From the sequence record KT919972.1: a stretch of DNA of 64,000 nucleotides, one strand, 5' to 3'. This document shows, piece after piece, positions 29,913 to 47,222 of this stretch (the first letter of the stretch is position 1; the number at the start of each line of letters is the position of its first letter). The position numbers and the translations under genes were made by a program. The notes under the pieces are model-generated. The model did not search any database. It had not been told where the DNA came from and saw only the letters and a list, made by a program, of their open reading frames with translations.

Positions 29913-29940
29913 AAAAAAGGGCGCTATTTGCGCCCTTTTG
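29913..29940 (-). terminator. Rho-independent terminator
   Basis: AAAAAAGGGCGC-TATTT-GCGCCCTTTT (+ strand view). Confidence 0.8.
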
Positions 29941-30454
29941 TTTTTTGTTTCTTTGCTTTTCGTTTAGCTCGTCTAAGTTCTTTTCGTTTAGCGATTTTAT
30001 CTGCTCTTCGAACTGCGTCGTAATCAGCAGCACAAGACGCAGCAAACGCATCAGGTTTGAACACGGGCTCTTGACCAACATATCCCAATATAGTACCTTT
30101 AGCTTCGTTATAGGCAACGTGAGATTTGTGTGTGGGGTCAGGGTTGATGTCAACGTGAACTTCAAAGCCTCTAGTACCGCACATTGGCTTAACCATTAGT
30201 GCAGTTTCACCCGCTTTGTATACTTCATTCATCAATCGACTTCTGATACCATCTTTACATGATAAGTATGCAGGTTCAGTCTCAACTGCTTTAAACACTT
30301 GAGCACCTTTACTACCTTCAAGATGAATTATGATCACAGTCGCGTAACTAATCATGTCACTTTTACGCTTACTATCACACCCAACGTATATTGTGCTATT
30401 TGGATGACTGTTATTGATAGCTGTTTCTATCGCTTCCCAATCGAACATTTTCAC
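29924..30454 (-). CDS. RNase H-fold protein, YkuK/DUF458-like
   Basis: IYVGCDS...YATVIIIH...SRLMNEV...EVHVDIN...KP.AFAAS.AAD; basic C-terminal tail. Confidence 0.75.
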   Translation of the reverse strand: MKMFDWEAIETAINNSHPNSTIYVGCDSKRKSDMISYATVIIIHLEGSKGAQVFKAVETEPAYLSCKDGIRSRLMNEVYKAGETALMVKPMCGTRGFEVHVDINPDPTHKSHVAYNEAKGTILGYVGQEPVFKPDAFAASCAADYDAVRRADKIAKRKELRRAKRKAKKQKTKGRK

Positions 30455-30497: not shown

Positions 30498-31934
30498 TTA
30501 AAAACTGTAGCGTTCGACGCCTACAGTTTTCATCATGATCTTGATTGGCTCAAGCTCACCACCCAACAGTGAAGTCAAGATAGATGGGCTACAACCAGAT
30601 ACCAGTGCAGTACCCGCTTCACCAGCTTTAACCGGAACGTTGCCAAGACGACCACGAATGTTCCAGAAGACCAGTTGTGGCATTTCATAACCAGCACGTG
30701 CGTACTTGGCTTTGATTGCATCGAAGTTCGCAGGTTCACCGCGACCGTACCAACCACCACCAGTGTTTGCTTGATCGAATTCCATGTCACTCATGATAAG
30801 CAACTTGGTTGGCATATCTTCTTGTGAAAGATTTGCACGCTTCGCACGCTCTAGCAGAACATCAAAGCACTTACCGATGTTCGTACTCATGTCTTCGCCT
30901 GAACGATTCATGTTATCAAGACGCTCTTTCAATGAGCTACCGCGCAACTGGTGGAAGTGCGGGTCGCTTGAGAACGAAATGAATTGATCTTTGAAGATGC
31001 CTTCATTGCGTTCAGCAACATAAATCCCAAGAGACATTGCAACTTGCTTACAAGTCACACCTGAATGGTCTGTACCTGCGTTGATTGGCGTGCTCATAGA
31101 GCCAGACACGTCAACAACAGGGATGATGCGTTCATCAGAACCTTCCATGTAGTTTGGCAGAGCTTTCCATTGCTCGTTCGCTACAGACGCATTACCGTGA
31201 CTAACGCTCTTAACGACATCGTATGGGAACAATGCGCCAGCGTTGATCTTCGCTTCACCTTTTTGAAGTGACTCGATGTAGCTTGTGTAACGAGCTGAAG
31301 CGTTACGACCGAATGCTTGTTGATAACGAGCAGACGCTACAGAAGGCAACTTACCGAAGTCGATTGCATCCCATTTTTGCGCACACATCTTCTGCTCAAC
31401 AGTGTCAGACAGAAGCGACAGAATCTTACGCCACTGCTTCGCAGTCACGCCAAGAGACTTGATTGTGCGCTTGAACACATGACCGTTTTTGCTGTTTTCA
31501 CGTGGGAACCACTTCGCAGCAAGACCATTCTTGTCATTGACAATTGCGTTCGACCACATTGTAATCGCATCTTTTTCAAGACGTGTACCGAAAGCAGAAA
31601 TCAAGTCATCGTAACGACCTAGTTCTGGAATTTTCGACATTACAGCACGAGCTACGTCAGGCTGTTCATTACAAAGTTTAGTGAATAGAGTACGGAAAGT
31701 ACCACGTTCACCCGCACCACCTCGAACATCACGAGACCACAAAAGAATGCGAGTCGCTAGTTCTGGGTTTTCTGCAAACGCACGACCGAACAGTGTTTTA
31801 GACTGATCGTTGCCACGCATAGCAGCAATACCGAAGAACAAGTTTAGACACTCGTTACCTGAAGTGCTGTGAGTAACTGCACCGTTTGCTGTGCGTGAAT
31901 CGTTTGTTTGCATTGCGTTCATAAATACTGACAT
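30498..31934 (-). CDS. DUF2828 family helical-domain + vWA protein (Ro60/TROVE-like architecture)
   Basis: RDVRGGAGER, GRYDDL, AAKWFPRE in the helical part; vWA MIDAS DVSGSM, LLIMSDMEFD, LVFWN. Confidence 0.88.
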   Translation of the reverse strand: MSVFMNAMQTNDSRTANGAVTHSTSGNECLNLFFGIAAMRGNDQSKTLFGRAFAENPELATRILLWSRDVRGGAGERGTFRTLFTKLCNEQPDVARAVMSKIPELGRYDDLISAFGTRLEKDAITMWSNAIVNDKNGLAAKWFPRENSKNGHVFKRTIKSLGVTAKQWRKILSLLSDTVEQKMCAQKWDAIDFGKLPSVASARYQQAFGRNASARYTSYIESLQKGEAKINAGALFPYDVVKSVSHGNASVANEQWKALPNYMEGSDERIIPVVDVSGSMSTPINAGTDHSGVTCKQVAMSLGIYVAERNEGIFKDQFISFSSDPHFHQLRGSSLKERLDNMNRSGEDMSTNIGKCFDVLLERAKRANLSQEDMPTKLLIMSDMEFDQANTGGGWYGRGEPANFDAIKAKYARAGYEMPQLVFWNIRGRLGNVPVKAGEAGTALVSGCSPSILTSLLGGELEPIKIMMKTVGVERYSF

Positions 31935-31970
31935 TGTTCATTTCCTCATAATTAATTGCTGTAAAATGTC
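31930..31970 (-). promoter_or_regulatory. 5'-leader hairpin covering the DUF2828 start codon
   Basis: GACATT-TTACAGCAA-TTAATTATGAGGAAATGAAC-AATGTC; the 3' strand contains the ATG; T4-type early promoter GTTTACA..TATAAT (-10 at 31983-31988) just upstream. Confidence 0.6.
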
Positions 31971-32024
31971 TTTGATGAAGTGATTATACGCGAATTTTAA
32001 TGCATGTAAACACTTTTTTTTAAT

Positions 32025-32671: not shown

Positions 32672-33033
32672 AGATATTCCTTAATTGGTTTTGAAAAATG
32701 TCGAATGCATGAACTATCGAGACGAGGACGACCATCACCGTCAATATCTGGTAGCGTGTACCCATCATTGAATGGTTGACCGCTTTCTTTCGCGAGTTCA
32801 TAAGCATCAGCGCGATTGAAGTATTCACCACAATAATTGATGAATCCCTGCCCACGATCACCAAGTTCGCTTCGATGTTCATATGTACAGCCAAGTTCTT
32901 TCAATAGCTTAAACACGCCTTGCATGTTTCGACCAAAATGGCAGCTATCTGCAACAACAATATCCCTCTCTTCGCCATTTGGTAAAGTGACTCTAATTGC
33001 ATTTGCAGCAGCAGAAATTACGTTTAAGTGCAT
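32668..33033 (-). CDS. conserved-looking phage hypothetical protein
   Basis: QGFIN..GEYFNR.DAYELA..SGQ pattern; coupled to neighbours. Confidence 0.65.
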   Translation of the reverse strand: MHLNVISAAANAIRVTLPNGEERDIVVADSCHFGRNMQGVFKLLKELGCTYEHRSELGDRGQGFINYCGEYFNRADAYELAKESGQPFNDGYTLPDIDGDGRPRLDSSCIRHFSKPIKEYL

Positions 33034-33371
33034 GTATCTTGCCTCATAAAGATAGAACCCACACGTTTATATTGAAGTGTACTCATCAACATCATAGTCA
33101 TCTTAGAGTGAGCAACAGGGTTACTCGTTACTAGAACAACTGTGCGTGGGAAGTTACGATGATCAATTGCATGAGAGAGAATATCATATCCCTCATGACC
33201 AAGAGCACCGCCTAGATCATTGTCCATGAATAAAGTAATATCTGTAAGATTCGTATGTTTGACGAATTTCATACCGTCTTCATACGTACGCAAAACAAGC
33301 TTCTGATCTGCGGAAATTTCAGGCGCAGTGAAATTATCGATATCACGCATATCATCAATCATTACAAACAT
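33024..33371 (-). CDS. cyclic-phosphate-processing receiver-like domain protein
   Basis: MIDDMR...LFMDNDLG...EGYDIL...LVTSNP..H..M matches the xxDDxR / DHDLG / GYD / HS.NP signature. Confidence 0.7.
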   Translation of the reverse strand: MFVMIDDMRDIDNFTAPEISADQKLVLRTYEDGMKFVKHTNLTDITLFMDNDLGGALGHEGYDILSHAIDHRNFPRTVVLVTSNPVAHSKMTMMLMSTLQYKRVGSIFMRQDTCT

Positions 33372-39532: not shown

Positions 39533-39607
39533 TGGTGGACACGCAGGGAGTCGAACCCTATCTTCCTCATTGCAAGTGAGGCGCTTTCCCAATTAAGCTA
39601 ACGGCCC
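39533..39607 (-). tRNA. tRNA-Ala(TGC)
   Basis: CCTCA-CTTGCAA-TGAGG, G3:U70; irregular lower acceptor stem. Confidence 0.82.
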
Positions 39608-40621: not shown

Positions 40622-40697
40622 TGGCGCTTCATGTTGGACTCGAACCAACGACTCTCTGATTAACAGTCAGACACTCTACCAACTGAGTTAATGAAGC
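40622..40697 (-). tRNA. tRNA-Asn(GTT)
   Basis: TCTGA-CTGTTAA-TCAGA, G73, CCA. Confidence 0.93.
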
Positions 40698-40773: not shown

Positions 40774-40785
40774 TTGAATTTAAAC

Positions 40786-40843
40786 AGTAATCCTTTTTGC
40801 TTTTTCCAAATAAAAGTTTTGTATTGTTTGCTGTAAGATTACT
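40786..40843 (-). ncRNA. minimal helix+ACAGCAA RNA (58 nt)
   Basis: AGTAATCT/GGATTACT closing helix, TACAGCAA, internal CTTTT-ATTTGGA-AAAAG hairpin. Confidence 0.55.
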
Positions 40844-41248: not shown

Positions 41249-41258
41249 ATTATTCAAC

Positions 41259-41345
41259 AGCTTGCGTTCTTTGGTCTGTTTATCGCTGTCTGAACTGAGT
41301 TCGTCGAGTGATCAATAGATTAAGTTGAATTGCAGTATGCAAGCT
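41259..41345 (-). ncRNA. small helix+ACTGCAA RNA (87 nt)
   Basis: AGCTTGC/GCAAGCT closing helix followed by AT-ACTGCAA. Confidence 0.55.
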
Positions 41346-41350
41346 AAAAC

Positions 41351-43064: not shown

Positions 43065-43301
43065 TTAACCTAAGTGTTTTCGCTTGTTCATTTCAACAAG
43101 AATTTCGTCGTTATAGTGCTTATTAAGCTCAACGAATTTCTTGTGTTGATCTGAAGTCAATTCGTTTGTATCGTTCAGATGCTTCAAAAAACCAAGAGGC
43201 TTACGAAACGACTTGCGATATTCATTTAGACGCTCATCTGTTAGATTGCGCAATTGTTTCGGAGTCAGTAACGTTTTGTTGATATTAAATGTTCCGCTCA
43301 T
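43065..43301 (-). CDS. hypothetical protein
   Basis: GAGG SD before MSGTFNINK. Confidence 0.7.
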   Translation of the reverse strand: MSGTFNINKTLLTPKQLRNLTDERLNEYRKSFRKPLGFLKHLNDTNELTSDQHKKFVELNKHYNDEILVEMNKRKHLG

Positions 43302-43327: not shown

Positions 43328-43443
43328 TGGTAGTCGGGGCTGGATTCGAACCAGCGACCACGTGCTTAACAGGCAATTGAAGGAGTGCTGGAGCGATACT
43401 TGTCAGTATCATTCTTCGTGCTCTACCACTGAGCTACCCGACT
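43328..43443 (-). ncRNA. tRNA-Asn(GTT) body with a 41-nt structured insertion at position 28/29
   Basis: removing 43376-43416 gives a regular 75-nt cloverleaf with CGTGC-CTGTTAA-GCACG and CCA. Confidence 0.8.
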
Positions 43444-43448
43444 ATAAA

Positions 43449-43745
43449 TTATTTGTCTTGCAATTGAGTGTAGTCACCTTTCATGAACGCATCCATGAAT
43501 TCACGTGTACTACTAAACTCTTTGAAATCACGCGGGCCATCATATTTCGTAATATAACGAACTTTCCCATCTCTAACCGTGATTTTACCATGACCCCAAT
43601 TCACAGAATCAGTTTTCTTACTAATTTGAACTTGCTTCTTCTGCAACCTGCGAACAAGTTCTTCTAAAAATCTACTGTCATCAGCAGCGCCAGATTGAAA
43701 TCCGCCGCCACCAAATTCAATTAGGAATTCACCAAACGTTTTCAT
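43449..43745 (-). CDS. late protein with a capsid-targeting-like N-terminus
   Basis: MKTFGEFLIE; GAGG SD; CATAAATA at about 43774-43781. Confidence 0.8.
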   Translation of the reverse strand: MKTFGEFLIEFGGGGFQSGAADDSRFLEELVRRLQKKQVQISKKTDSVNWGHGKITVRDGKVRYITKYDGPRDFKEFSSTREFMDAFMKGDYTQLQDK

Positions 43746-43776: not shown

Positions 43777-44301
43777 TTATGATTTCGTTTTGAACTTCAA
43801 ATTTCGATATTCAAAGTTTCGTTTGTCTTTTTTATTGTAATACGTATCCCAATCAATAGAAACAGGACAGTTCTTACTACCCACACGAGATAAGAAAACG
43901 TCGTGAGTGTCTTTGTAAGCTTCTCTGAGAGACTTTACTTGTTTCTCATGATGAGTTATGTACTCAGCACACGCTTTGTTGTACTCAGCTTTAGAGAAGC
44001 GATCATCGCCCGTGAAATTACCGTTTAGATACGGTCGAATAACACGAACACGTTCTTTAGACCATCCCATACTAAAACTATTTTCAATTCGACCGATGAT
44101 TTCACCAGTCTTTTTACATCGTGCAAGAATAACCCAGCAACGCTCTCTTCGAAAGTCTTTTCGAGTGAATACATTGATGTACTTATCAACATACTCTTGA
44201 TAGCGTTCGTTATATATTTTACGAAGTCTGCTACGTTCTTCAATCGTCATAGCAGCACGTTCTTCTTTAGAGAACGCTTCAACGAACTTCAATGGTTTCA
44301 T
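43777..44301 (-). CDS. hypothetical basic protein
   Basis: GAGG SD before MKPLKF. Confidence 0.75.
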   Translation of the reverse strand: MKPLKFVEAFSKEERAAMTIEERSRLRKIYNERYQEYVDKYINVFTRKDFRRERCWVILARCKKTGEIIGRIENSFSMGWSKERVRVIRPYLNGNFTGDDRFSKAEYNKACAEYITHHEKQVKSLREAYKDTHDVFLSRVGSKNCPVSIDWDTYYNKKDKRNFEYRNLKFKTKS

Positions 44302-44559: not shown

Positions 44560-44790
44560 TTAAAGATAGCTGTCAAAAACATCATCACTGACTTCTTCAA
44601 TCTTGATGTCAGCGTAACATTCGTTCGCAACTGCTCGAATTTCATCTATTGAAACTGTACCTGAGTACAAAACAACAGAGTCGTTCGGAATCACAACATC
44701 ACACATGTATCTGTCAAACATTTCAGTTCTGAAATCGTAATCGACGTAGCAACCGTGCATTGATGTGATAACTAGCAATTTATGTGACAT
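44560..44790 (-). CDS. hypothetical protein
   Basis: GAGG SD; promoter TTGACA at about 44845-44850 upstream. Confidence 0.7.
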   Translation of the reverse strand: MSHKLLVITSMHGCYVDYDFRTEMFDRYMCDVVIPNDSVVLYSGTVSIDEIRAVANECYADIKIEEVSDDVFDSYL

Positions 44791-44947: not shown

Positions 44948-45316
44948 TCATTTCTCCAGAAATCGACCAACTTTCGCAGCGAAGATGTTTGCTTCTTCTG
45001 TAATACGAGCAGTCGATTTAATTTGATGAAAAGCGTCTTGTTGATGTAGCTCATCGAGCTTATCTGCACATTTCATCAATTCTTTTATAGTTTGCATAAT
45101 CTCAATATTATCAAACTGACTTGTATCAGGGTGATAATTTAGATTGTCTAATATCGGCAGAACTTGTTGATAGCAACCCATGCCAATGAAGTTTATCATA
45201 AGTCTATACTGCATTTCAACAGCAAATGTACAATATTTTCGAAGATTGCGCTTTACAATCTCACAACGATGCAATATACAATCAAGTTCGTCATTTATGT
45301 CATTAAACTTATTCAT
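44948..45316 (-). CDS. hypothetical protein
   Basis: GAGGG SD before MNKFND. Confidence 0.7.
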   Translation of the reverse strand: MNKFNDINDELDCILHRCEIVKRNLRKYCTFAVEMQYRLMINFIGMGCYQQVLPILDNLNYHPDTSQFDNIEIMQTIKELMKCADKLDELHQQDAFHQIKSTARITEEANIFAAKVGRFLEK

Positions 45317-45330
45317 AAACCCTCGAAAAT

Positions 45331-45455
45331 TGGAGGAGAGTACGGGATTTGAACCACGTGACAAAAAGATTTACCTAGTTATTAAGGTTTGCAGCATGAA
45401 TGCTTGTCAGTATTCTTTAACATTCTTTTGCTCTACCAGACTGAGCTAACTCTCC
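45331..45455 (-). ncRNA. tRNA body with the anticodon loop replaced by a ~54-nt module
   Basis: GGAGAGT acceptor, D arm, AAAGA/TCTTT stem enclosing GAATACT-GACA-AGCATTC-ATGCTGCAAA, T arm, TCCA. Confidence 0.7.
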
Positions 45456-45461
45456 AGAATT

Positions 45462-45580
45462 TGAAGGTGAAGTGCAGGACTCGAACCTGCGACCTCCGGC
45501 GTGCATGTGAATGCAGAATGAAATCTTATCAGACTTCGTTTTTTTTGGCCGGCATTCTAACCAACTGAACTAACTTCACC
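45462..45580 (-). ncRNA. Asp-like tRNA body with the anticodon loop replaced by a ~47-nt module
   Basis: D arm GTTC-AGTTGGTTA-GAAT, CCGGC/GCCGG stem enclosing GAAGTCT-GATA-AGATTTC-ATTCTGCAT; no CCA. Confidence 0.7.
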
Positions 45581-45594
45581 AATGTAAAAACATA

Positions 45595-45719
45595 TTGAGC
45601 AGGGTGCAGGATTCGAACCTGCGTCACGATCTTGGAAATGATATGCTAAATTGATTGCAGAATACAAACTTAACAGCTTGCGTTTATGCTACGTGTGCTA
45701 GCCACTACACCAACCCTGC
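45595..45719 (-). ncRNA. Gly-like tRNA body with a 49-nt insertion at position 28/29
   Basis: GCAGGGT acceptor, U73, residual loop ATTTCCAA; insert holds a hairpin + ATTCTGCAA; 17-bp extended acceptor duplex. Confidence 0.75.
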
Positions 45720-45793
45720 TCAATATGTTCTTGAGAGTGCTTGTGATTAACCACAAGCACCAAAAATCCTCTAGTTATATTTGCCTTAGCTAA

Positions 45794-45952
45794 TCAACAC
45801 AACCTGAAATCGTGCGCTTTATTTACGGGATGAATGACCCGTTCGCATATGATTAGCGCAAAAGTATGAATGCGCACCTTTTCTTCTTCAATGTCCAAGG
45901 CAAAGAGGACGATGAATACTAGTGCGAGAAGATATACAATCAAATTGTTCAC
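45794..45952 (-). CDS. possible small membrane protein
   Basis: GAG SD + GTG start, hydrophobic N-terminus. Confidence 0.4.
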   Translation of the reverse strand: MNNLIVYLLALVFIVLFALDIEEEKVRIHTFALIICERVIHPVNKAHDFRLC

Positions 45953-45976
45953 CTCGCTTGATAAGTGAGAGTACAT

Positions 45977-46099
45977 TGGTCGAGTGTAACGGAATCGAAC
46001 CGTTCCCACGATCTCCCTATGATATGCGTAAATTGGTTGCTGAATATAATCATGTCTGATTACAGTATGCTACGTGTGCTGCCACTACACCAACACTCG
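45977..46099 (-). ncRNA. Pro-like tRNA body (AGG) with a 49-nt insertion at position 28/29
   Basis: C1-G72, A73, CCA; loop AT-AGG-GA; insert holds a hairpin + ATTCAGCAA; 21-bp extended acceptor duplex. Confidence 0.75.
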
Positions 46100-46120
46100 A
46101 CCAATGTACTCTCGATATTT

Positions 46121-46259
46121 TAAATGTGCGCTACTTGCACGCCGACTGAGCGAATTTTAACTCAGCTAGTTTTTGATTGAGAATTCGTCCGCTAAGAGTA
46201 TCCCTGCACGCCAGAACGTATACTGGCTCCATGTATTCATTGCGGCTAACGCACATTTA
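46121..46259 (-). ncRNA. structured RNA with a long closing helix (variant GCCGCAA)
   Basis: TAAATGTGCGTTA/TAGCGCACATTTA, then GCCGCAA and two internal hairpins. Confidence 0.55.
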
Positions 46260-46266
46260 AAATATT

Positions 46267-46371
46267 ACTCATCTTCAGAGAAGAGGCAGAAACGATGAGT
46301 TTAGTCTGCTTAATCAATATTGTTCATCTTCAATAAGAGGCGAGAACGATGAACTTAGCTCGCTTAATCAA
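46267..46371 (-). repeat. tandem pair of ~50-nt pseudoknot-forming repeats
   Basis: two copies with compensatory stem changes, at the 5' end of the RNA-gene transcript. Confidence 0.75.
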
Positions 46372-46377
46372 CTGTGT

Positions 46378-46512
46378 TAATCTTAACATCATTTCAGTGT
46401 AAGTCAACAACTTTTTTTTCAAATATTTCATCGAGTTGAAAGTTTGTGTTCTGTCTCTCGACTCGATGAAATACATTCTACATGCTTTTCAGAATAAGTC
46501 AACAACTTTTTG
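46378..46512 (-). promoter_or_regulatory. tandem sigma70 promoters for the RNA-gene cluster
   Basis: two copies of AAAAAGTTGTTGACTTA followed by TAGAAT and TAAGAT -10 boxes, separated by a 13-bp inverted repeat (TATTTCATCGAGT/ACTCGATGAAATA). Confidence 0.75.
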
Positions 46513-46519
46513 AAAGTTT

Positions 46520-46774
46520 TTATACTGAAAGAATGATACCGCTTTCTGTCTCACCTCGTTCAAGCGCAGCGTGCTTGATTTGAAGCTGAGATACAGCTTG
46601 CTGAAGCTCAGTGATAGCTTTATCGTAAAGTTTGTTGTTCTCTTTAAGTAAAGCAATCTGATCGGTCTGCATACCGATGATATACGTCAATAATACAACG
46701 TTCTCTTCAGTAGTTAGAGTTTCGGGAGCTTCATTGTACTTCTTTAATACTGCTTCAGTAGATAAATCAGTCAT
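46520..46774 (-). CDS. coiled-coil hypothetical protein
   Basis: start overlaps the gp57B stop. Confidence 0.7.
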   Translation of the reverse strand: MTDLSTEAVLKKYNEAPETLTTEENVVLLTYIIGMQTDQIALLKENNKLYDKAITELQQAVSQLQIKHAALERGETESGIILSV

Positions 46775-47222
46775 TACTATCAACCCAATTTAAATCAAGT
46801 GGTTCAAGATATTCATCAACAAGCCGAACTTCAGCGTTGACGGACATAGGTGTGATCGCGTCGTCATAAGACAACGTAACGTGAGGGGTATAGTCAGGGT
46901 AGTCGTGAGTACCACCGATAGAGATAAGATCATCGTGACGTTCTACAAGTTCTGGACATACCATCTTAGCAACAACTGCATATTTGCCGTCTTGCGTTTT
47001 CCAACAGTCGATATGTTCAACAGTAGCAACGAAAGTGGTATCGACAACAGGTACATCAATTTGCTTACGACTATAAAGCACAGTCACGTGAAATTTATCT
47101 GGTTCTAACGGATTTTTTAGACGAAGCGTTTTCTGCAATCGAACTAACTCTTGCTTACTCGCCTCGTCTAATCTGATACCAACGTAAGTTCCCTGACTTT
47201 CAAGGAACTTAGATAGTTTCAT
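46767..47222 (-). CDS. acb1: 2H-phosphoesterase, T4 gp57B / anti-CBASS nuclease Acb1
   Basis: two HxT motifs (KFHVTVLYSR, YTPHVTLSY), WKTQDG and THDYPDY as in T4 57B; synteny 1-57A-57B. Confidence 0.9.
   Translation of the reverse strand: MKLSKFLESQGTYVGIRLDEASKQELVRLQKTLRLKNPLEPDKFHVTVLYSRKQIDVPVVDTTFVATVEHIDCWKTQDGKYAVVAKMVCPELVERHDDLISIGGTHDYPDYTPHVTLSYDDAITPMSVNAEVRLVDEYLEPLDLNWVDSND

What the first reader, a model, noticed from the sequence alone, without database searches (positions are those of the whole stretch)
43328..43443. An otherwise perfect tRNA-Asn interrupted by a 41-nt insertion at position 28/29
Seen: AGTCGGG-TA-GCTC-AGTGGTA-GAGC-A-CG [AAGAAT-GATACT-GACA-AGTATC-GCTCCAGCACTCCTTCAAT] TGC-CTGTTAA-GCACG-TGGTC-GCTGG-TTCGAAT-CCAGC-CCCGACT-A-CCA. 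Deleting 43376-43416 yields a regular 75-nt cloverleaf with a GTT anticodon. The insert is a GACA-loop hairpin followed by a CAGCA variant of the family motif. Established: bacterial tRNA introns are self-splicing group I/II introns; short protein-spliced introns at non-canonical sites are an archaeal/eukaryal feature. Inference: either a permanently grafted protein-docking arm (a Y-RNA-like chimera that keeps an anticodon) or a new kind of short removable tRNA intron in a phage. Discriminator A73 differs from the G73 of the two regular Asn tRNAs here, so charging is uncertain.
Basis: partly seen in the sequence, partly recalled or inferred. Interest (0 to 1): 0.8.

Follow-up and report, generated by a model that had tools for sequence, protein, structure and literature searches.

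The report
tRNA-shaped Y-RNA partner of phage Ro
The "interrupted tRNA-Asn" is real, but it is most likely a stable tRNA-shaped RNA whose extra arm docks a Ro60-like ring protein encoded 11 kb away in the same phage, and is unlikely to be a tRNA with a new kind of intron.

Summary
The window is Vibrio phage phi-Grn1, a KVP40-like relative of T4. On the minus strand, 43443->43328 is a 116-nt tRNA-like gene. Deleting 43376-43416 gives a 75-nt tRNA-Asn(GTT).

It is not a pseudogene. It is 97-100% conserved where flanks are about 87% identical, and divergent relatives keep every stem through compensatory changes.

The insert is a module shared by four paralogues in the window: a 7-bp hairpin with a GNNA loop, 3 nt, then CNGCA(A). 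The same "7-bp helix + 3 nt + CAGCAA" lies beside a DUF2828/vWA gene in Felixounavirus, Listeria, Campylobacter and Mycobacterium phages and in metagenomic phages. Two of those RNAs match Rfam YrlA below its gathering score, with CAGCAA at or beside the place where YrlA has its Ro-binding motif.

The window encodes that protein at 30498-31934 (minus strand). Its AlphaFold model matches only Ro60 structures over its full length.

Best reading (0.68): a Y-RNA-like tRNA mimic in native tRNA topology with an internal, capped docking module. The intron reading is unsupported: no BHB motif, too short for a self-splicing intron, and three paralogues have no anticodon loop.

Protein binding, processing, charging and the role of the conserved Asn-like hairpin are untested.

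The parts
43328..43443 (-). Element A: the 116-nt tRNA-like RNA gene of the finding. Acceptor strands 43443-43437 / 43338-43332, D-arm 43434-43420, T-arm 43355-43339, A73 at 43331, encoded CCA 43330-43328.
   Evidence: Rfam tRNA 49.8 bits. Over 10 orthologues 99.5% of cells pair and 6 of 7 acceptor pairs show compensatory changes. It is 97-100% identical in KVP40, nt-1, QD01 and VS2, where the surrounding 4 kb is about 87% identical.
43394..43411 (-). Hairpin-1 of the insert: 7-bp stem (43411-43405 with 43400-43394) capped by the GACA loop (43404-43401). Proposed helix of the docking module.
   Evidence: The geometry is constant in all family members. Over 28 distinct modules 96.4% of cells pair, 7 of 7 pairs have compensatory changes, and the covariation score is 0.94 against 0.29 in shuffles, 0/500. 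G-U pairs form only on the minus-strand transcript.
43385..43393 (-). 3-nt spacer (43393-43391) and CNGCA motif (CAGCAC, 43390-43385). Proposed single-stranded recognition motif.
   Evidence: C, G, C and A are invariant in 28 modules. The same helix + 3 nt + CAGCAA lies beside DUF2828 genes in 5 other phage lineages: 2-4 copies against 0.06-0.16 expected, 0/300 shuffles.
43361..43375 (-). Hairpin-2, TGC-CTGTTAA-GCA (43375-43363), plus CG (43362-43361). With C-G at 43418-43417 it rebuilds a 5-bp Asn-type anticodon arm.
   Evidence: Phage D479 keeps it with a compensatory change (AGC...GCT), but its loop reads CCGTTAA, so U33 is lost.
43376..43416 (-).
   Evidence: It sits at the same site in every orthologue, with length 38-52 nt.
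45331..45455 (-). Paralogue B: tRNA-like RNA with an ATGTTAA (Asn-like) loop followed by the module, so the insert lies at 38/39. CCA is encoded.
45463..45579 (-). Paralogue C: tRNA-like RNA with stem CCGGC/GCCGG closing a 47-nt loop that holds the module. It has no anticodon-like loop.
45595..45719 (-). Paralogue D: tRNA-like RNA with the module. Its terminal stem extends to 15 bp beyond the acceptor.
45968..46112 (-). Paralogue E: tRNA-like core 45977-46099 with the module. Leader and trailer pair for 13 further bp across the ACCA end.
30498..31934 (-). Gene for the 478-aa DUF2828 + DUF7788 (vWA) protein, the proposed Ro60-like partner of the RNAs.
   Evidence: Pfam E = 2.7e-29 and 2e-46. 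It is 36% identical (E = 2e-101) to the homologue that abuts the tRNA-like cluster in L013. The AlphaFold2 model has pLDDT 81 and pTM 0.77. The top six Foldseek PDB matches are all Ro60, probability 1.0, TM 0.49-0.57.
31956..31971 (-). The same module (AGACATT + TTA + CAGCAA) in the 5' leader of the Ro-like gene. A partner strand AATGTC overlaps the start codon at 31934.
   Evidence: This is read from sequence only, and autoregulation is an inference.
46122..46258 (-). Terminal-stem-type module RNA: a 10-bp end stem, TAG, then CCGCAA at 46245-46240.
40785..40843 (-). Short spacer RNA between tRNA-Trp and tRNA-Asn: AGTAATC + TTA + CAGCAA ... GATTACT + G.
   Evidence: One search gave only a weak chance-level Rfam match here.
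41257..41347 (-). Spacer RNA between tRNA-Tyr and tRNA-Met: AGCTTGC + ATA + CTGCAA ... GCAAGCT + G.

Best explanation
Element A is a stable non-coding RNA of the Y-RNA kind, a tRNA mimic that serves as partner RNA for the phage's own Ro60-like ring protein (DUF2828/vWA, window 30498-31934). It keeps a native tRNA topology: acceptor stem with free ends, often an encoded CCA, and D- and T-arms that should give the L-shape and make it a substrate for RNase P and other tRNA enzymes. Its anticodon stem opens into a three-way junction. One branch is the docking module, a 7-bp helix capped by a GNNA loop, then 3 nt and the single-stranded CNGCA(A) motif. The other branch is a truncated Asn-type anticodon hairpin. 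By analogy with Ro60/Y RNA particles, the module would hold the ring protein while the tRNA-shaped body recruits or occludes a tRNA-recognising effector. That would direct RNA quality control, repair or decay during infection. Shown here: the structure, its conservation and covariation, the family, the link between module and DUF2828 genes across phages, and the Ro60-like predicted fold. Inferred: that the protein binds the module, that the RNA is processed like a tRNA and not spliced, and what the particle does.
For: (1) It is a selected RNA, not debris. It is 97-100% identical where the surrounding 4 kb is about 87% identical. The acceptor, T and hairpin-2 stems keep pairing through compensatory changes in 6E35/K566, D479 and the metagenomic phages L011-L020. 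(2) The insert is a module with fixed geometry that recurs in 5 paralogues here and in 28 distinct copies overall, with strong covariation and invariant C, G, C and A. (3) The same helix + 3 nt + CAGCAA lies on the gene's strand within 1.3 kb of DUF2828 genes in Felixounavirus, Listeria LP-124, Campylobacter CPX, Mycobacterium Appletree2 and metagenomic L013 (2-4 copies each), with a single copy (not significant) in L025. The enrichment over shuffles holds for the first five (0/300), and the T4 tRNA region has none. (4) Two of these RNAs match Rfam YrlA over the full model, below the gathering score: L023 at 39.8 bits and L027 at 32.4 bits. CAGCAA lies at or just before the 5' end of the match, where canonical YrlA has the GNCGAA Rsr motif (Chen et al. 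2014, PMC4201824; phiLo Yrl CGAA motif, PMC12135203). (5) Read round the circle, A has the same order of parts as YrlA: helix strand, motif, variable region, T-arm, acceptor, D-arm, helix strand. Only the position of the ends differs. (6) The window's DUF2828 protein has a Ro60-like predicted fold: Foldseek's top 6 are all Ro60 and the next hits match the vWA domain only. A weak profile hit also goes to the phiLo TROVE protein. It sits beside RNA-repair-type domains, PF04308 and cREC_REC.
Against: There is no binding, expression or processing data. In KVP40-like phages the protein gene is 11.4 kb from A and not adjacent. A's motif (CAGCAC here, CCGCAT/CCGCAC in relatives) departs most from the CAGCAA consensus. 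The equivalence of a capped hairpin and a terminal stem is my inference. The docking idea does not explain why A, and B in another position, keep a conserved GTT anticodon-like loop. The modules used for covariation were picked with at most one mismatch allowed, so the percentage paired is partly built in. The Rfam YrlA hits are below the gathering score.
Confidence: 0.68

Rival explanations
1. A is a true tRNA-Asn gene with a new kind of short intron. A phage or host nuclease cuts the 41 nt out, an RNA ligase (Rnl or RtcB type) seals the ends, and a functional tRNA results.
For: Exact removal gives a perfect 75-nt tRNA-Asn(gtt). The 2 + 3 bp of the split anticodon stem are kept, with one compensatory change in D479. 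B also keeps a GTT loop next to its module. From my own knowledge, T4-like phages carry RNA ligases and a polynucleotide kinase.
Against: No bulge-helix-bulge pairing can be drawn at the junctions (sequence). At 41 nt and inside the stem, it cannot be a group I or II intron. C, D and E carry the same module but no loop that excision could restore. U33 is lost in D479's A and in the 6E35/K566 copies of B. The discriminator varies A/G whereas the regular Asn tRNAs have G73. The phage already has two ordinary tRNA-Asn genes. No insert-less homologue exists in IMG/VR. The module occurs outside any tRNA in other phages.
Confidence: 0.07
2. The tRNA-like RNAs are functional, but the module serves something other than the Ro-like protein. 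Examples are a decoy or sponge for a host anticodon nuclease or other defence factor, or a site for a different phage protein. The link with DUF2828 would then be indirect.
For: The cluster lies in a counter-defence neighbourhood next to the Acb1/57B gene. A and B display Asn-type GUU loops that could bait enzymes acting on GUN anticodons. No binding data exist.
Against: DUF2828 is the only gene seen beside the module in all the unrelated lineages examined. The module also lies in the leader of the DUF2828 gene itself. Canonical Ro60 proteins, including a phage one, bind RNAs built as a helix followed by a short motif (PMC4201824, PMC12135203).
Confidence: 0.17
3. A is a decaying tRNA pseudogene, as annotated in KVP40 ('tRNA-Pseudo-3'), and the cloverleaf after deletion is a remnant.
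For: This is the standing database annotation. The phi-pp2 and phi-Grn1 genome papers list such RNAs as low-scoring 'pseudo-forms' (PMC3468402, PMC5107563).
Against: It is far better conserved than its surroundings. Compensatory changes occur in the acceptor, T, hairpin-1 and hairpin-2 stems. It is retained, insert included, in distant phages.
Confidence: 0.02

Closest known systems
YrlA, the bacterial and phage Y RNA-like tRNA mimics (Rfam RF02553; Chen et al. 2014, PMC4201824; structure preprint 10.1101/312249)
   Same: It has a tRNA-like D-arm, T-arm and acceptor helix. The Ro-binding part projects from the anticodon-stem position. It is built as a helix followed by a short single-stranded motif. 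It is encoded with a Ro60-type ring protein, several copies per genome. DUF2828-linked RNAs in L023 and L027 match the YrlA model.
   Different: YrlA is circularly permuted: its ends form the Ro-binding stem and its acceptor is closed by a loop. A has native tRNA ends, a CCA in several lineages, and a docking helix capped by a GNNA loop. The motif is CNGCA(A) and not GNCGAA. The partner belongs to the DUF2828 branch and is not an annotated TROVE protein. A also keeps an anticodon-like hairpin. It does not match the Rfam model: the only hit in the window, 32 bits at 45430-45494, is an artefact that spans two adjacent genes.
Thermus phage phiLo Ro60 with Yrl1/Yrl2 (PMC12135203; PDB 9KOP, 9L5Y)
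   Same: It is a phage-encoded Ro60-type ring with vWA domain plus small RNAs encoded beside it. The RNAs have a 5'-3' stem flanking a bulge with a 4-nt core motif, and mutating that motif weakens binding. These structures are the best structural matches to the window's protein.
   Different: The phiLo RNAs are not tRNA-shaped and use CGAA. Sequence identity to the window's protein is only about 15%.
Deinococcus radiodurans Yrn1 and the Ro-Y RNA-PNPase particle (as described in PMC4201824)
   Same: It is a Y RNA with tRNA-like features that tethers the ring protein to an effector nuclease. It is the working model for the mechanism proposed here.
   Different: It has a different orientation of the tRNA-like arms, a different motif and a cellular origin. 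No effector is known for the phage system.
Phage T4 stable RNAs C and D (species 1 and 2 RNAs)
   Same: They are small stable RNAs of unknown function at the edge of the tRNA cluster, in the same gene order (gene 1, 57A, 57B..., tRNAs).
   Different: No regular tRNA body and no module were found. Homology is not evident.
Archaeal/eukaryal intron-containing tRNAs and bacterial tRNA group I introns
   Same: A tRNA gene is interrupted in its anticodon arm, and removing the insert gives a canonical cloverleaf.
   Different: There is no BHB motif. The size and position are wrong for group I or II introns. The insert is a conserved functional module that also occurs outside tRNAs.

Membership tests
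Y RNA / YrlA-type tRNA mimic | Encoded together with a Ro60-type ring protein (HEAT-repeat ring plus vWA domain) | tested here: met
   The DUF2828/DUF7788 gene at 30498-31934 lies on the same strand, 11.4 kb away. Its predicted fold matches only Ro60 over the full length. In L013 the homologue directly abuts the tRNA-like cluster.
Y RNA / YrlA-type tRNA mimic | tRNA-like D- and T-arms and an acceptor helix able to form the L-shape | tested here: met
   Rfam tRNA 49.8 bits over the whole model. The G18G19 and TTCGAAT loops are present, and 99.5% of cells pair across orthologues.
Y RNA / YrlA-type tRNA mimic | Helix plus conserved short motif that binds Ro (GNCGAA / CGAA in canonical members) | tested here: inconclusive
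   The architecture is present (7-bp helix + 3 nt + motif), but the motif is CNGCA(A) and not GNCGAA. In L023, CAGCAA lies immediately 5' of the YrlA match, whose first positions fall where the model carries its cGaAUG stretch. In L027 it lies within the first positions of the matched interval; that alignment was not inspected.
Y RNA / YrlA-type tRNA mimic | RNA ends form the Ro-binding stem and the acceptor is closed (permuted topology) | tested here: not met
   A ends at the acceptor stem with ACCA, and its docking helix is capped by GACA. The circular order of parts is the same.
Y RNA / YrlA-type tRNA mimic | Match to Rfam RF02553 at the gathering score (69 bits) | tested here: not met
   There is no hit on A. 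The only hit in the window is a 32-bit partial match that spans genes C and B.
Y RNA / YrlA-type tRNA mimic | Physical association with the Ro-type protein | not testable with these tools
   This needs RIP/CLIP or EMSA.
Protein-spliced (BHB) tRNA intron | Bulge-helix-bulge structure at the two junctions | tested here: not met
   The 4-nt exon segment upstream of the 5' junction (GCAC or AGCA) has no complement at the 3' end of the insert (TTCA, CTTC or TCAA). This was read directly from the sequence.
Protein-spliced (BHB) tRNA intron | Removal of one segment restores a canonical tRNA in all members that carry the insert | tested here: not met
   This holds for A and formally for B, but not for C, D or E.
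Protein-spliced (BHB) tRNA intron | A splicing endonuclease encoded by the phage or host | not tested
   I did not scan the whole phage or host genome for one.
Self-splicing group I/II intron in a bacterial tRNA | Ribozyme core of a few hundred nucleotides, inserted in the anticodon loop | tested here: not met
   The insert is 41 nt and lies in the stem at 28/29. No Rfam intron family matched.
tRNA pseudogene | Neutral decay: conserved no better than the flanks, with stems broken in relatives | tested here: not met
Elongator tRNA-Asn | Continuous 5-bp anticodon stem, 7-nt loop with U33, and G73 | tested here: not met
   The stem is interrupted, so ARAGORN finds nothing. Phi-Grn1, KVP40 and nt-1 have A73. 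D479 has C33.

The most novel reading that the evidence does not exclude
A, and B in another register, is a two-headed adaptor. It would be a Ro-docking Y RNA that also presents a genuine tRNA-Asn anticodon arm and a CCA end. The ring protein would then be brought specifically to enzymes that act on GUN-anticodon tRNAs, such as an anticodon nuclease, the queuine-inserting enzyme or AsnRS. Alternatively, the module is removed under some conditions to release a working tRNA-Asn. More broadly, the native-topology RNAs could be the missing link showing how permuted Y RNAs arose from tRNAs.
Probability: 0.12. Interest if true: 0.85.

Novelty: new variant of a known kind. Interest (0 to 1): 0.62.

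Why it matters
These RNAs have been annotated as "tRNA pseudogenes" or miscalled tRNAs since at least the deposited KVP40 record. If the reading is right, they become a family of natural tRNA-scaffolded Y RNAs.

It also gives a candidate RNA recognition code for the DUF2828 branch of Ro60-like proteins: a 7-bp helix, 3 nt, then CAGCAA. That branch is very large, with at least 7,500 homologues at E <= 1e-10 and matches in 706 phage records. I found no RNA partner for it described in the searchable literature.

Unpermuted (KVP40-like) and permuted (L027, mycobacteriophage) versions carry the same motif. That makes the idea that Y RNAs evolved from tRNAs directly testable. A leader copy of the module on the protein's own mRNA suggests an autoregulatory loop. 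In practice, genome annotators should stop calling these RNAs tRNA-Val, Ile, Phe, Cys or pseudogenes.

Tried and rejected
- **Archaeal-type intron.** I looked for bulge-helix-bulge pairing at both junctions and found none.
- **Group I/II intron or small ribozyme.** The size and position are wrong, and no Rfam family other than tRNA matched.
- **The YrlA hit at 45430-45494.** This is an artefact of the T-arm of gene C lying next to the D-arm of gene B.
- **Homology with T4 rnaC/rnaD.** They lie in the same neighbourhood but have no regular tRNA body and no module.
- **tmRNA-like reading of "GCA" as a resume codon.** There is no G3-U70 alanine identity and no consistent short reading frame across orthologues (by eye).
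- **Anti-Shine-Dalgarno resemblance of CACUCCUU after the motif.** It is not conserved in nt-1 or 6E35.
- **Similarity to the SRP RNA domain IV tetraloop plus AGCA, P22 boxB and CRISPR repeats.** The stem length, the variable stem sequence and the lack of a 5' partner do not fit.
- **Neighbouring small ORFs** (43065-43301, 43449-43745, 43777-44301, 44560-44790, 44948-45316). None has an informative domain.
- **First structure prediction.** The 26-sequence alignment worked.
- **Sequence search of the PDB.** It gave only a marginal TROVE hit (E = 0.007). The fold comparison was needed.
- **The loose search for terminal-stem modules.** It was too permissive and was replaced by a strict version with shuffles.
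- **Literature.** The KVP40 genome paper is not held. I found no transcriptome for these phages.
Full report
**Source and observation**

The window is identical to Vibrio phage phi-Grn1 (KT919972.1), a KVP40-like member of the T4 family (Schizotequatrovirus), and window coordinates equal record coordinates. The finding lies on the minus strand at 43443->43328. Rfam's tRNA model matches it from end to end at 49.8 bits (E = 4e-9), with 54 nt in place of the inner anticodon arm. ARAGORN in default mode misses it.

Removing 43376-43416 in silico gives a 75-nt sequence that ARAGORN calls tRNA-Asn(gtt) with a regular cloverleaf. The insert contains a 7-bp hairpin with a GACA loop, then CTC and CAGCAC. 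The two ordinary Asn tRNAs have G73 and this RNA has A73.

Annotation programs disagree on what the gene is. GenBank (tRNAscan) says tRNA-Val here and tRNA-Ile in phi-ST2. KVP40's record says 'tRNA-Pseudo-3'. ARAGORN with its intron option says tRNA-Ile with a 22-nt intron. The two genome papers that mention such RNAs list them only as low-scoring pseudo-forms (PMC3468402, PMC5107563).

**It is a selected RNA, not a pseudogene**

Element A is 97-100% identical in KVP40, nt-1, QD01 and VS2. The 4-kb region around it is about 87% identical in the same genomes.

More distant phages keep the gene with its insert at the same site:
- The 6E35.1a/K566 group and D479.
- Eight metagenomic contigs from IMG/VR.

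Across ten orthologues 99.5% of base-pair cells are standard pairs, and 6 of 7 acceptor pairs, 2 T-stem pairs and 1 hairpin-2 pair show changes on both sides. The covariation score is 0.415, against 0.145 in shuffles (0/500) and at most 0.06 for slid registers. A pattern search for the same tRNA without the insert found nothing in IMG/VR.

**The insert is a shared module**

Four more long tRNA-like genes lie on the same strand:
- B, 45331-45455
- C, 45463-45579
- D, 45595-45719
- E, 45977-46099

All have regular acceptor, D and T arms, and all carry the same thing in the anticodon arm: an A-rich linker, a 7-bp hairpin with a G-N-N-A loop, 3 nt, then C-N-G-C-A, usually followed by A. The distance from loop to motif is constant.

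In 28 distinct copies from nine phage genomes (eight lineages) the stem sequence is free but stays paired. Pairing is 96.4%, all 7 pairs have compensatory changes, and the score is 0.94 against 0.29 in shuffles (0/500) and at most 0.17 for slid registers. C, G, C and A of the motif and the first loop G are invariant. One caveat applies: copies were collected allowing at most one mismatch, so the percentage paired is partly built in. The variety of pair types is not.

G-U pairs occur only in the minus-strand sense, so the structure acts as RNA.

C, D and E have no anticodon-like loop that removing a segment could restore. B has A-T/C-GTT-A/G-A just before its module, and U33 is lost in the 6E35/K566 copies. 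D479's copy of A reads CCGTTAA. A general 'intron' reading therefore fails, although A and B clearly descend from, or imitate, tRNA-Asn.

**The lead to a protein**

In the metagenomic phage (L012/L013) at least five such modules sit in tRNA-like scaffolds. They lie next to a 516-aa gene of PHROG 850 ('RNA-binding protein'), which Pfam resolves as DUF2828 + DUF7788 + vWA. tblastn finds homologues in 706 phage records, including 56 Vibrio phages. Mycobacteriophage annotators call them 'Ro-like RNA binding protein'.

The window encodes one at 30498-31934 on the minus strand. It is 36% identical to the L013 protein (E = 2e-101). It lies beside a PF04308 RNase-H-like gene, with a cREC_REC (cyclic-phosphate-processing receiver) gene about 1.1 kb further on. 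The DUF2828-PF04308 pair recurs in another T4-like phage, L027.

Sequence searches of the PDB gave only a marginal hit to the Thermus phage phiLo TROVE protein (E = 0.007). An AlphaFold2 model built on 26 homologues (pLDDT 81, pTM 0.77) was more informative. Over its full length it matches only Ro60 structures: phiLo Ro60 (9KOP, 9L5Y) and Xenopus Ro60 (2I91, 1YVP), with probability 1.0, E = 6e-7 to 2e-4 and TM 0.49-0.57. All further hits cover just the vWA domain.

**The module travels with this protein**

I fetched the DUF2828 neighbourhood in four unrelated phages and in two metagenomic contigs. In six of the seven other DUF2828 neighbourhoods examined (these six plus L013), the non-coding DNA beside the gene, on the gene's strand, holds copies of one design. 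The design is the 5' strand of a 7-bp stem, 3 nt, CAGCAA, a variable stretch, then the 3' strand of the stem, usually followed by G.

| Locus | Phage | Copies |
|---|---|---|
| L021 | Felixounavirus (between tRNA genes) | 4 |
| L022 | Listeria LP-124 | 3 |
| L023 | Mycobacterium Appletree2 | 3 |
| L024 | Campylobacter CPX | 2 |
| L025 | metagenomic contig | 1 |
| L013 | metagenomic contig | 4 further copies |

With the strict definition the expectation from shuffles is 0.06-0.16 per locus. No shuffle in 300 reached the observed count in L013, L021, L022, L023 or L024. The single copy in L025 is not significant on its own (shuffle fraction 0.12). L027 has no strict module near its gene; its one strict match, about 2.6 kb from the gene, is at chance level. 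The T4 tRNA region has none. The stems differ between copies by compensatory changes, for example AGACCAA/TTGGTCT against AGACCGT/ACGGTCT in L021.

**The link to Y RNAs**

One of the Appletree2 RNAs (L023 5535-5643) matches Rfam's YrlA model over its whole length at 39.8 bits, E = 1.7e-7 in the local search. This is below the gathering score of 69. CAGCAA lies immediately 5' of the match, where canonical YrlA carries its GNCGAA motif.

In L027 the RNA at 881-1012 matches YrlA over the full model (32.4 bits, E = 3e-5). It reads: stem strand GAGTGAT, TA, CAGCAA, T-arm, closed acceptor hairpin, D-arm, stem strand ATCACTC.

Chen et al. (PMC4201824) proposed GNCGAA as the Rsr contact. [quoted passage not shown] The YrlA structure paper (10.1101/312249) shows that the Ro-binding part extends from the anticodon-stem position. 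For phage phiLo Ro60, mutating any base of the CGAA motif weakens binding 3- to 4-fold (PMC12135203).

Read round the circle, element A has the same order of parts as these RNAs: helix strand, 3 nt, motif, linker, variable loop, T-arm, acceptor, D-arm, linker, helix strand. The only difference is where the chain is open. YrlA is open at the docking helix and closed at the acceptor. A is open at the acceptor, like a tRNA, and its docking helix is capped by the GNNA loop.

The window also holds terminal-stem versions of the module:
- 46122-46258.
- Two spacer RNAs inside the tRNA array, 41257-41347 and 40785-40843.
- One in the leader of the Ro-like gene itself (31956-31971), whose partner strand overlaps the start codon.

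**Mechanism proposed**

Shown: a conserved L-shape-competent tRNA body; a conserved and covarying docking-type module in its anticodon arm; co-inheritance of that module with a Ro60-like protein across phage lineages; and the same protein in this genome.

Inferred: A is cut from its polycistronic transcript like a tRNA. Its gene begins 6 nt after the upstream ORF and ends 27 nt before the next one. A promoter-like site lies at 44849->44821 and a terminator-like site at 42795->42775. It would persist unspliced and bind the ring protein through the helix and the CNGCA motif. Its tRNA-shaped part would then tether or gate the ring towards a tRNA-recognising effector, as Y RNA does for Ro60 and PNPase. 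A role in tRNA/RNA repair, quality control or diversion of host RNA decay during infection is plausible. The neighbouring RNA-repair-type domains fit this, as do RtcB or RNA-ligase genes a few kilobases from the homologue in Listeria LP-124 and L025.

Unexplained: why A keeps a near-invariant Asn-type hairpin, with a compensatory stem change in D479; why B keeps GTT in a different place; and why D and E extend their terminal stems by 8 and 13 bp beyond the acceptor.

**Comparison, novelty and verdict**

Functionally and architecturally this is a Y RNA of the YrlA kind. It fails three formal membership tests:
- It does not match the Rfam model.
- Its topology is unpermuted.
- Its motif differs.

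Its partner belongs to the DUF2828 branch and is not an annotated TROVE protein. I therefore class it as a new variant of a known kind. I found no paper in the searchable library that links DUF2828 proteins, or the KVP40 'pseudo-tRNAs', to Y-like RNAs or to a CAGCAA motif. The library lacks most subscription journals, so prior description cannot be excluded.

My confidences are:
- 0.68 for the docking-RNA reading.
- 0.17 that the RNAs are functional but serve another factor.
- 0.07 for a removable intron.
- 0.02 for a pseudogene.

Interest is 0.62. This single locus is one member of a family. The family reading turns long-standing 'pseudogenes' into partners of a very widespread phage protein, and it offers a testable recognition code and an evolutionary bridge between tRNAs and Y RNAs.

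Noticed in passing
window 45331-46112 (minus strand): There are four paralogous long tRNA-like genes (B, C, D, E) with the same hairpin + CNGCA module. D and E have leader-trailer pairing that extends the acceptor helix to 15 and about 20 bp. GenBank calls them tRNA-Asn, Phe, Cys and pseudo.
   Followed up: yes
window 31956-31990 (minus strand): The leader of the Ro-like gene carries AGACATT + TTA + CAGCAA. A complementary AATGTC overlaps the ATG at 31934, and the Shine-Dalgarno sequence lies in the enclosed loop. This looks like a binding site for translational autoregulation.
   Followed up: partly
window 40785-40843, 41257-41347 and 46122-46258 (minus strand): Three further small RNAs of the terminal-stem type (7-10 bp end stem + 3 nt + C-N-GCAA) are present. 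Two fill spacers between ordinary tRNA genes, as in Felixounavirus.
   Followed up: partly
window 29924-30454 and 33024-33371 (minus strand): A PF04308 RNase-H-like gene lies next to the Ro-like gene, and a cREC_REC (cyclic-phosphate-processing receiver) gene about 1.1 kb beyond it. The DUF2828-PF04308 pair is also adjacent in the T4-like contig L027.
   Followed up: partly
window 46262-46510 (minus strand): Two strong sigma-70-like promoters (46502->46475 and 46407->46380) are each followed by hairpin-forming sequence. They include two tandem units of about 55 nt (46371-46317 and 46316-46262). These may be further small RNAs of unknown function upstream of E.
   Followed up: no
window 46767-47222 (minus strand): The gene annotated '57B / RNA ligase' in relatives matches Pfam Acb1 (anti-CBASS 2H phosphoesterase) at E = 7e-46. 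The tRNA-like cluster therefore lies next to a counter-defence gene.
   Followed up: no
window 40625-40697 and 39536-39607 (minus strand): GenBank labels 40625-40697 tRNA-Asp, but ARAGORN reads anticodon GTT (Asn). Rfam finds a 44.9-bit tRNA at 39536-39607 that ARAGORN does not report.
   Followed up: no
L022 2471-3022 (Listeria phage LP-124): A ROOL RNA match (87.4 bits, E = 2e-16, just under the gathering score) lies between the tRNA genes and the DUF2828 gene. An RtcB ligase gene lies 1.3 kb downstream.
   Followed up: no
L027 881-1012 and L023 5425-5720: Permuted YrlA-type RNAs with CAGCAA in place of GNCGAA lie near DUF2828 genes in a marine T4-like contig and in Mycobacterium phage Appletree2. 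Appletree2 has three motif-bearing RNAs in a row.
   Followed up: yes
L009 5137-5177 (Vibrio phage D479): D479 has a sixth module copy (ATTATTCT-GGAA-AGAATAGT + TG + CGGCAA) with no counterpart among the five in phi-Grn1. Its scaffold was not examined.
   Followed up: no
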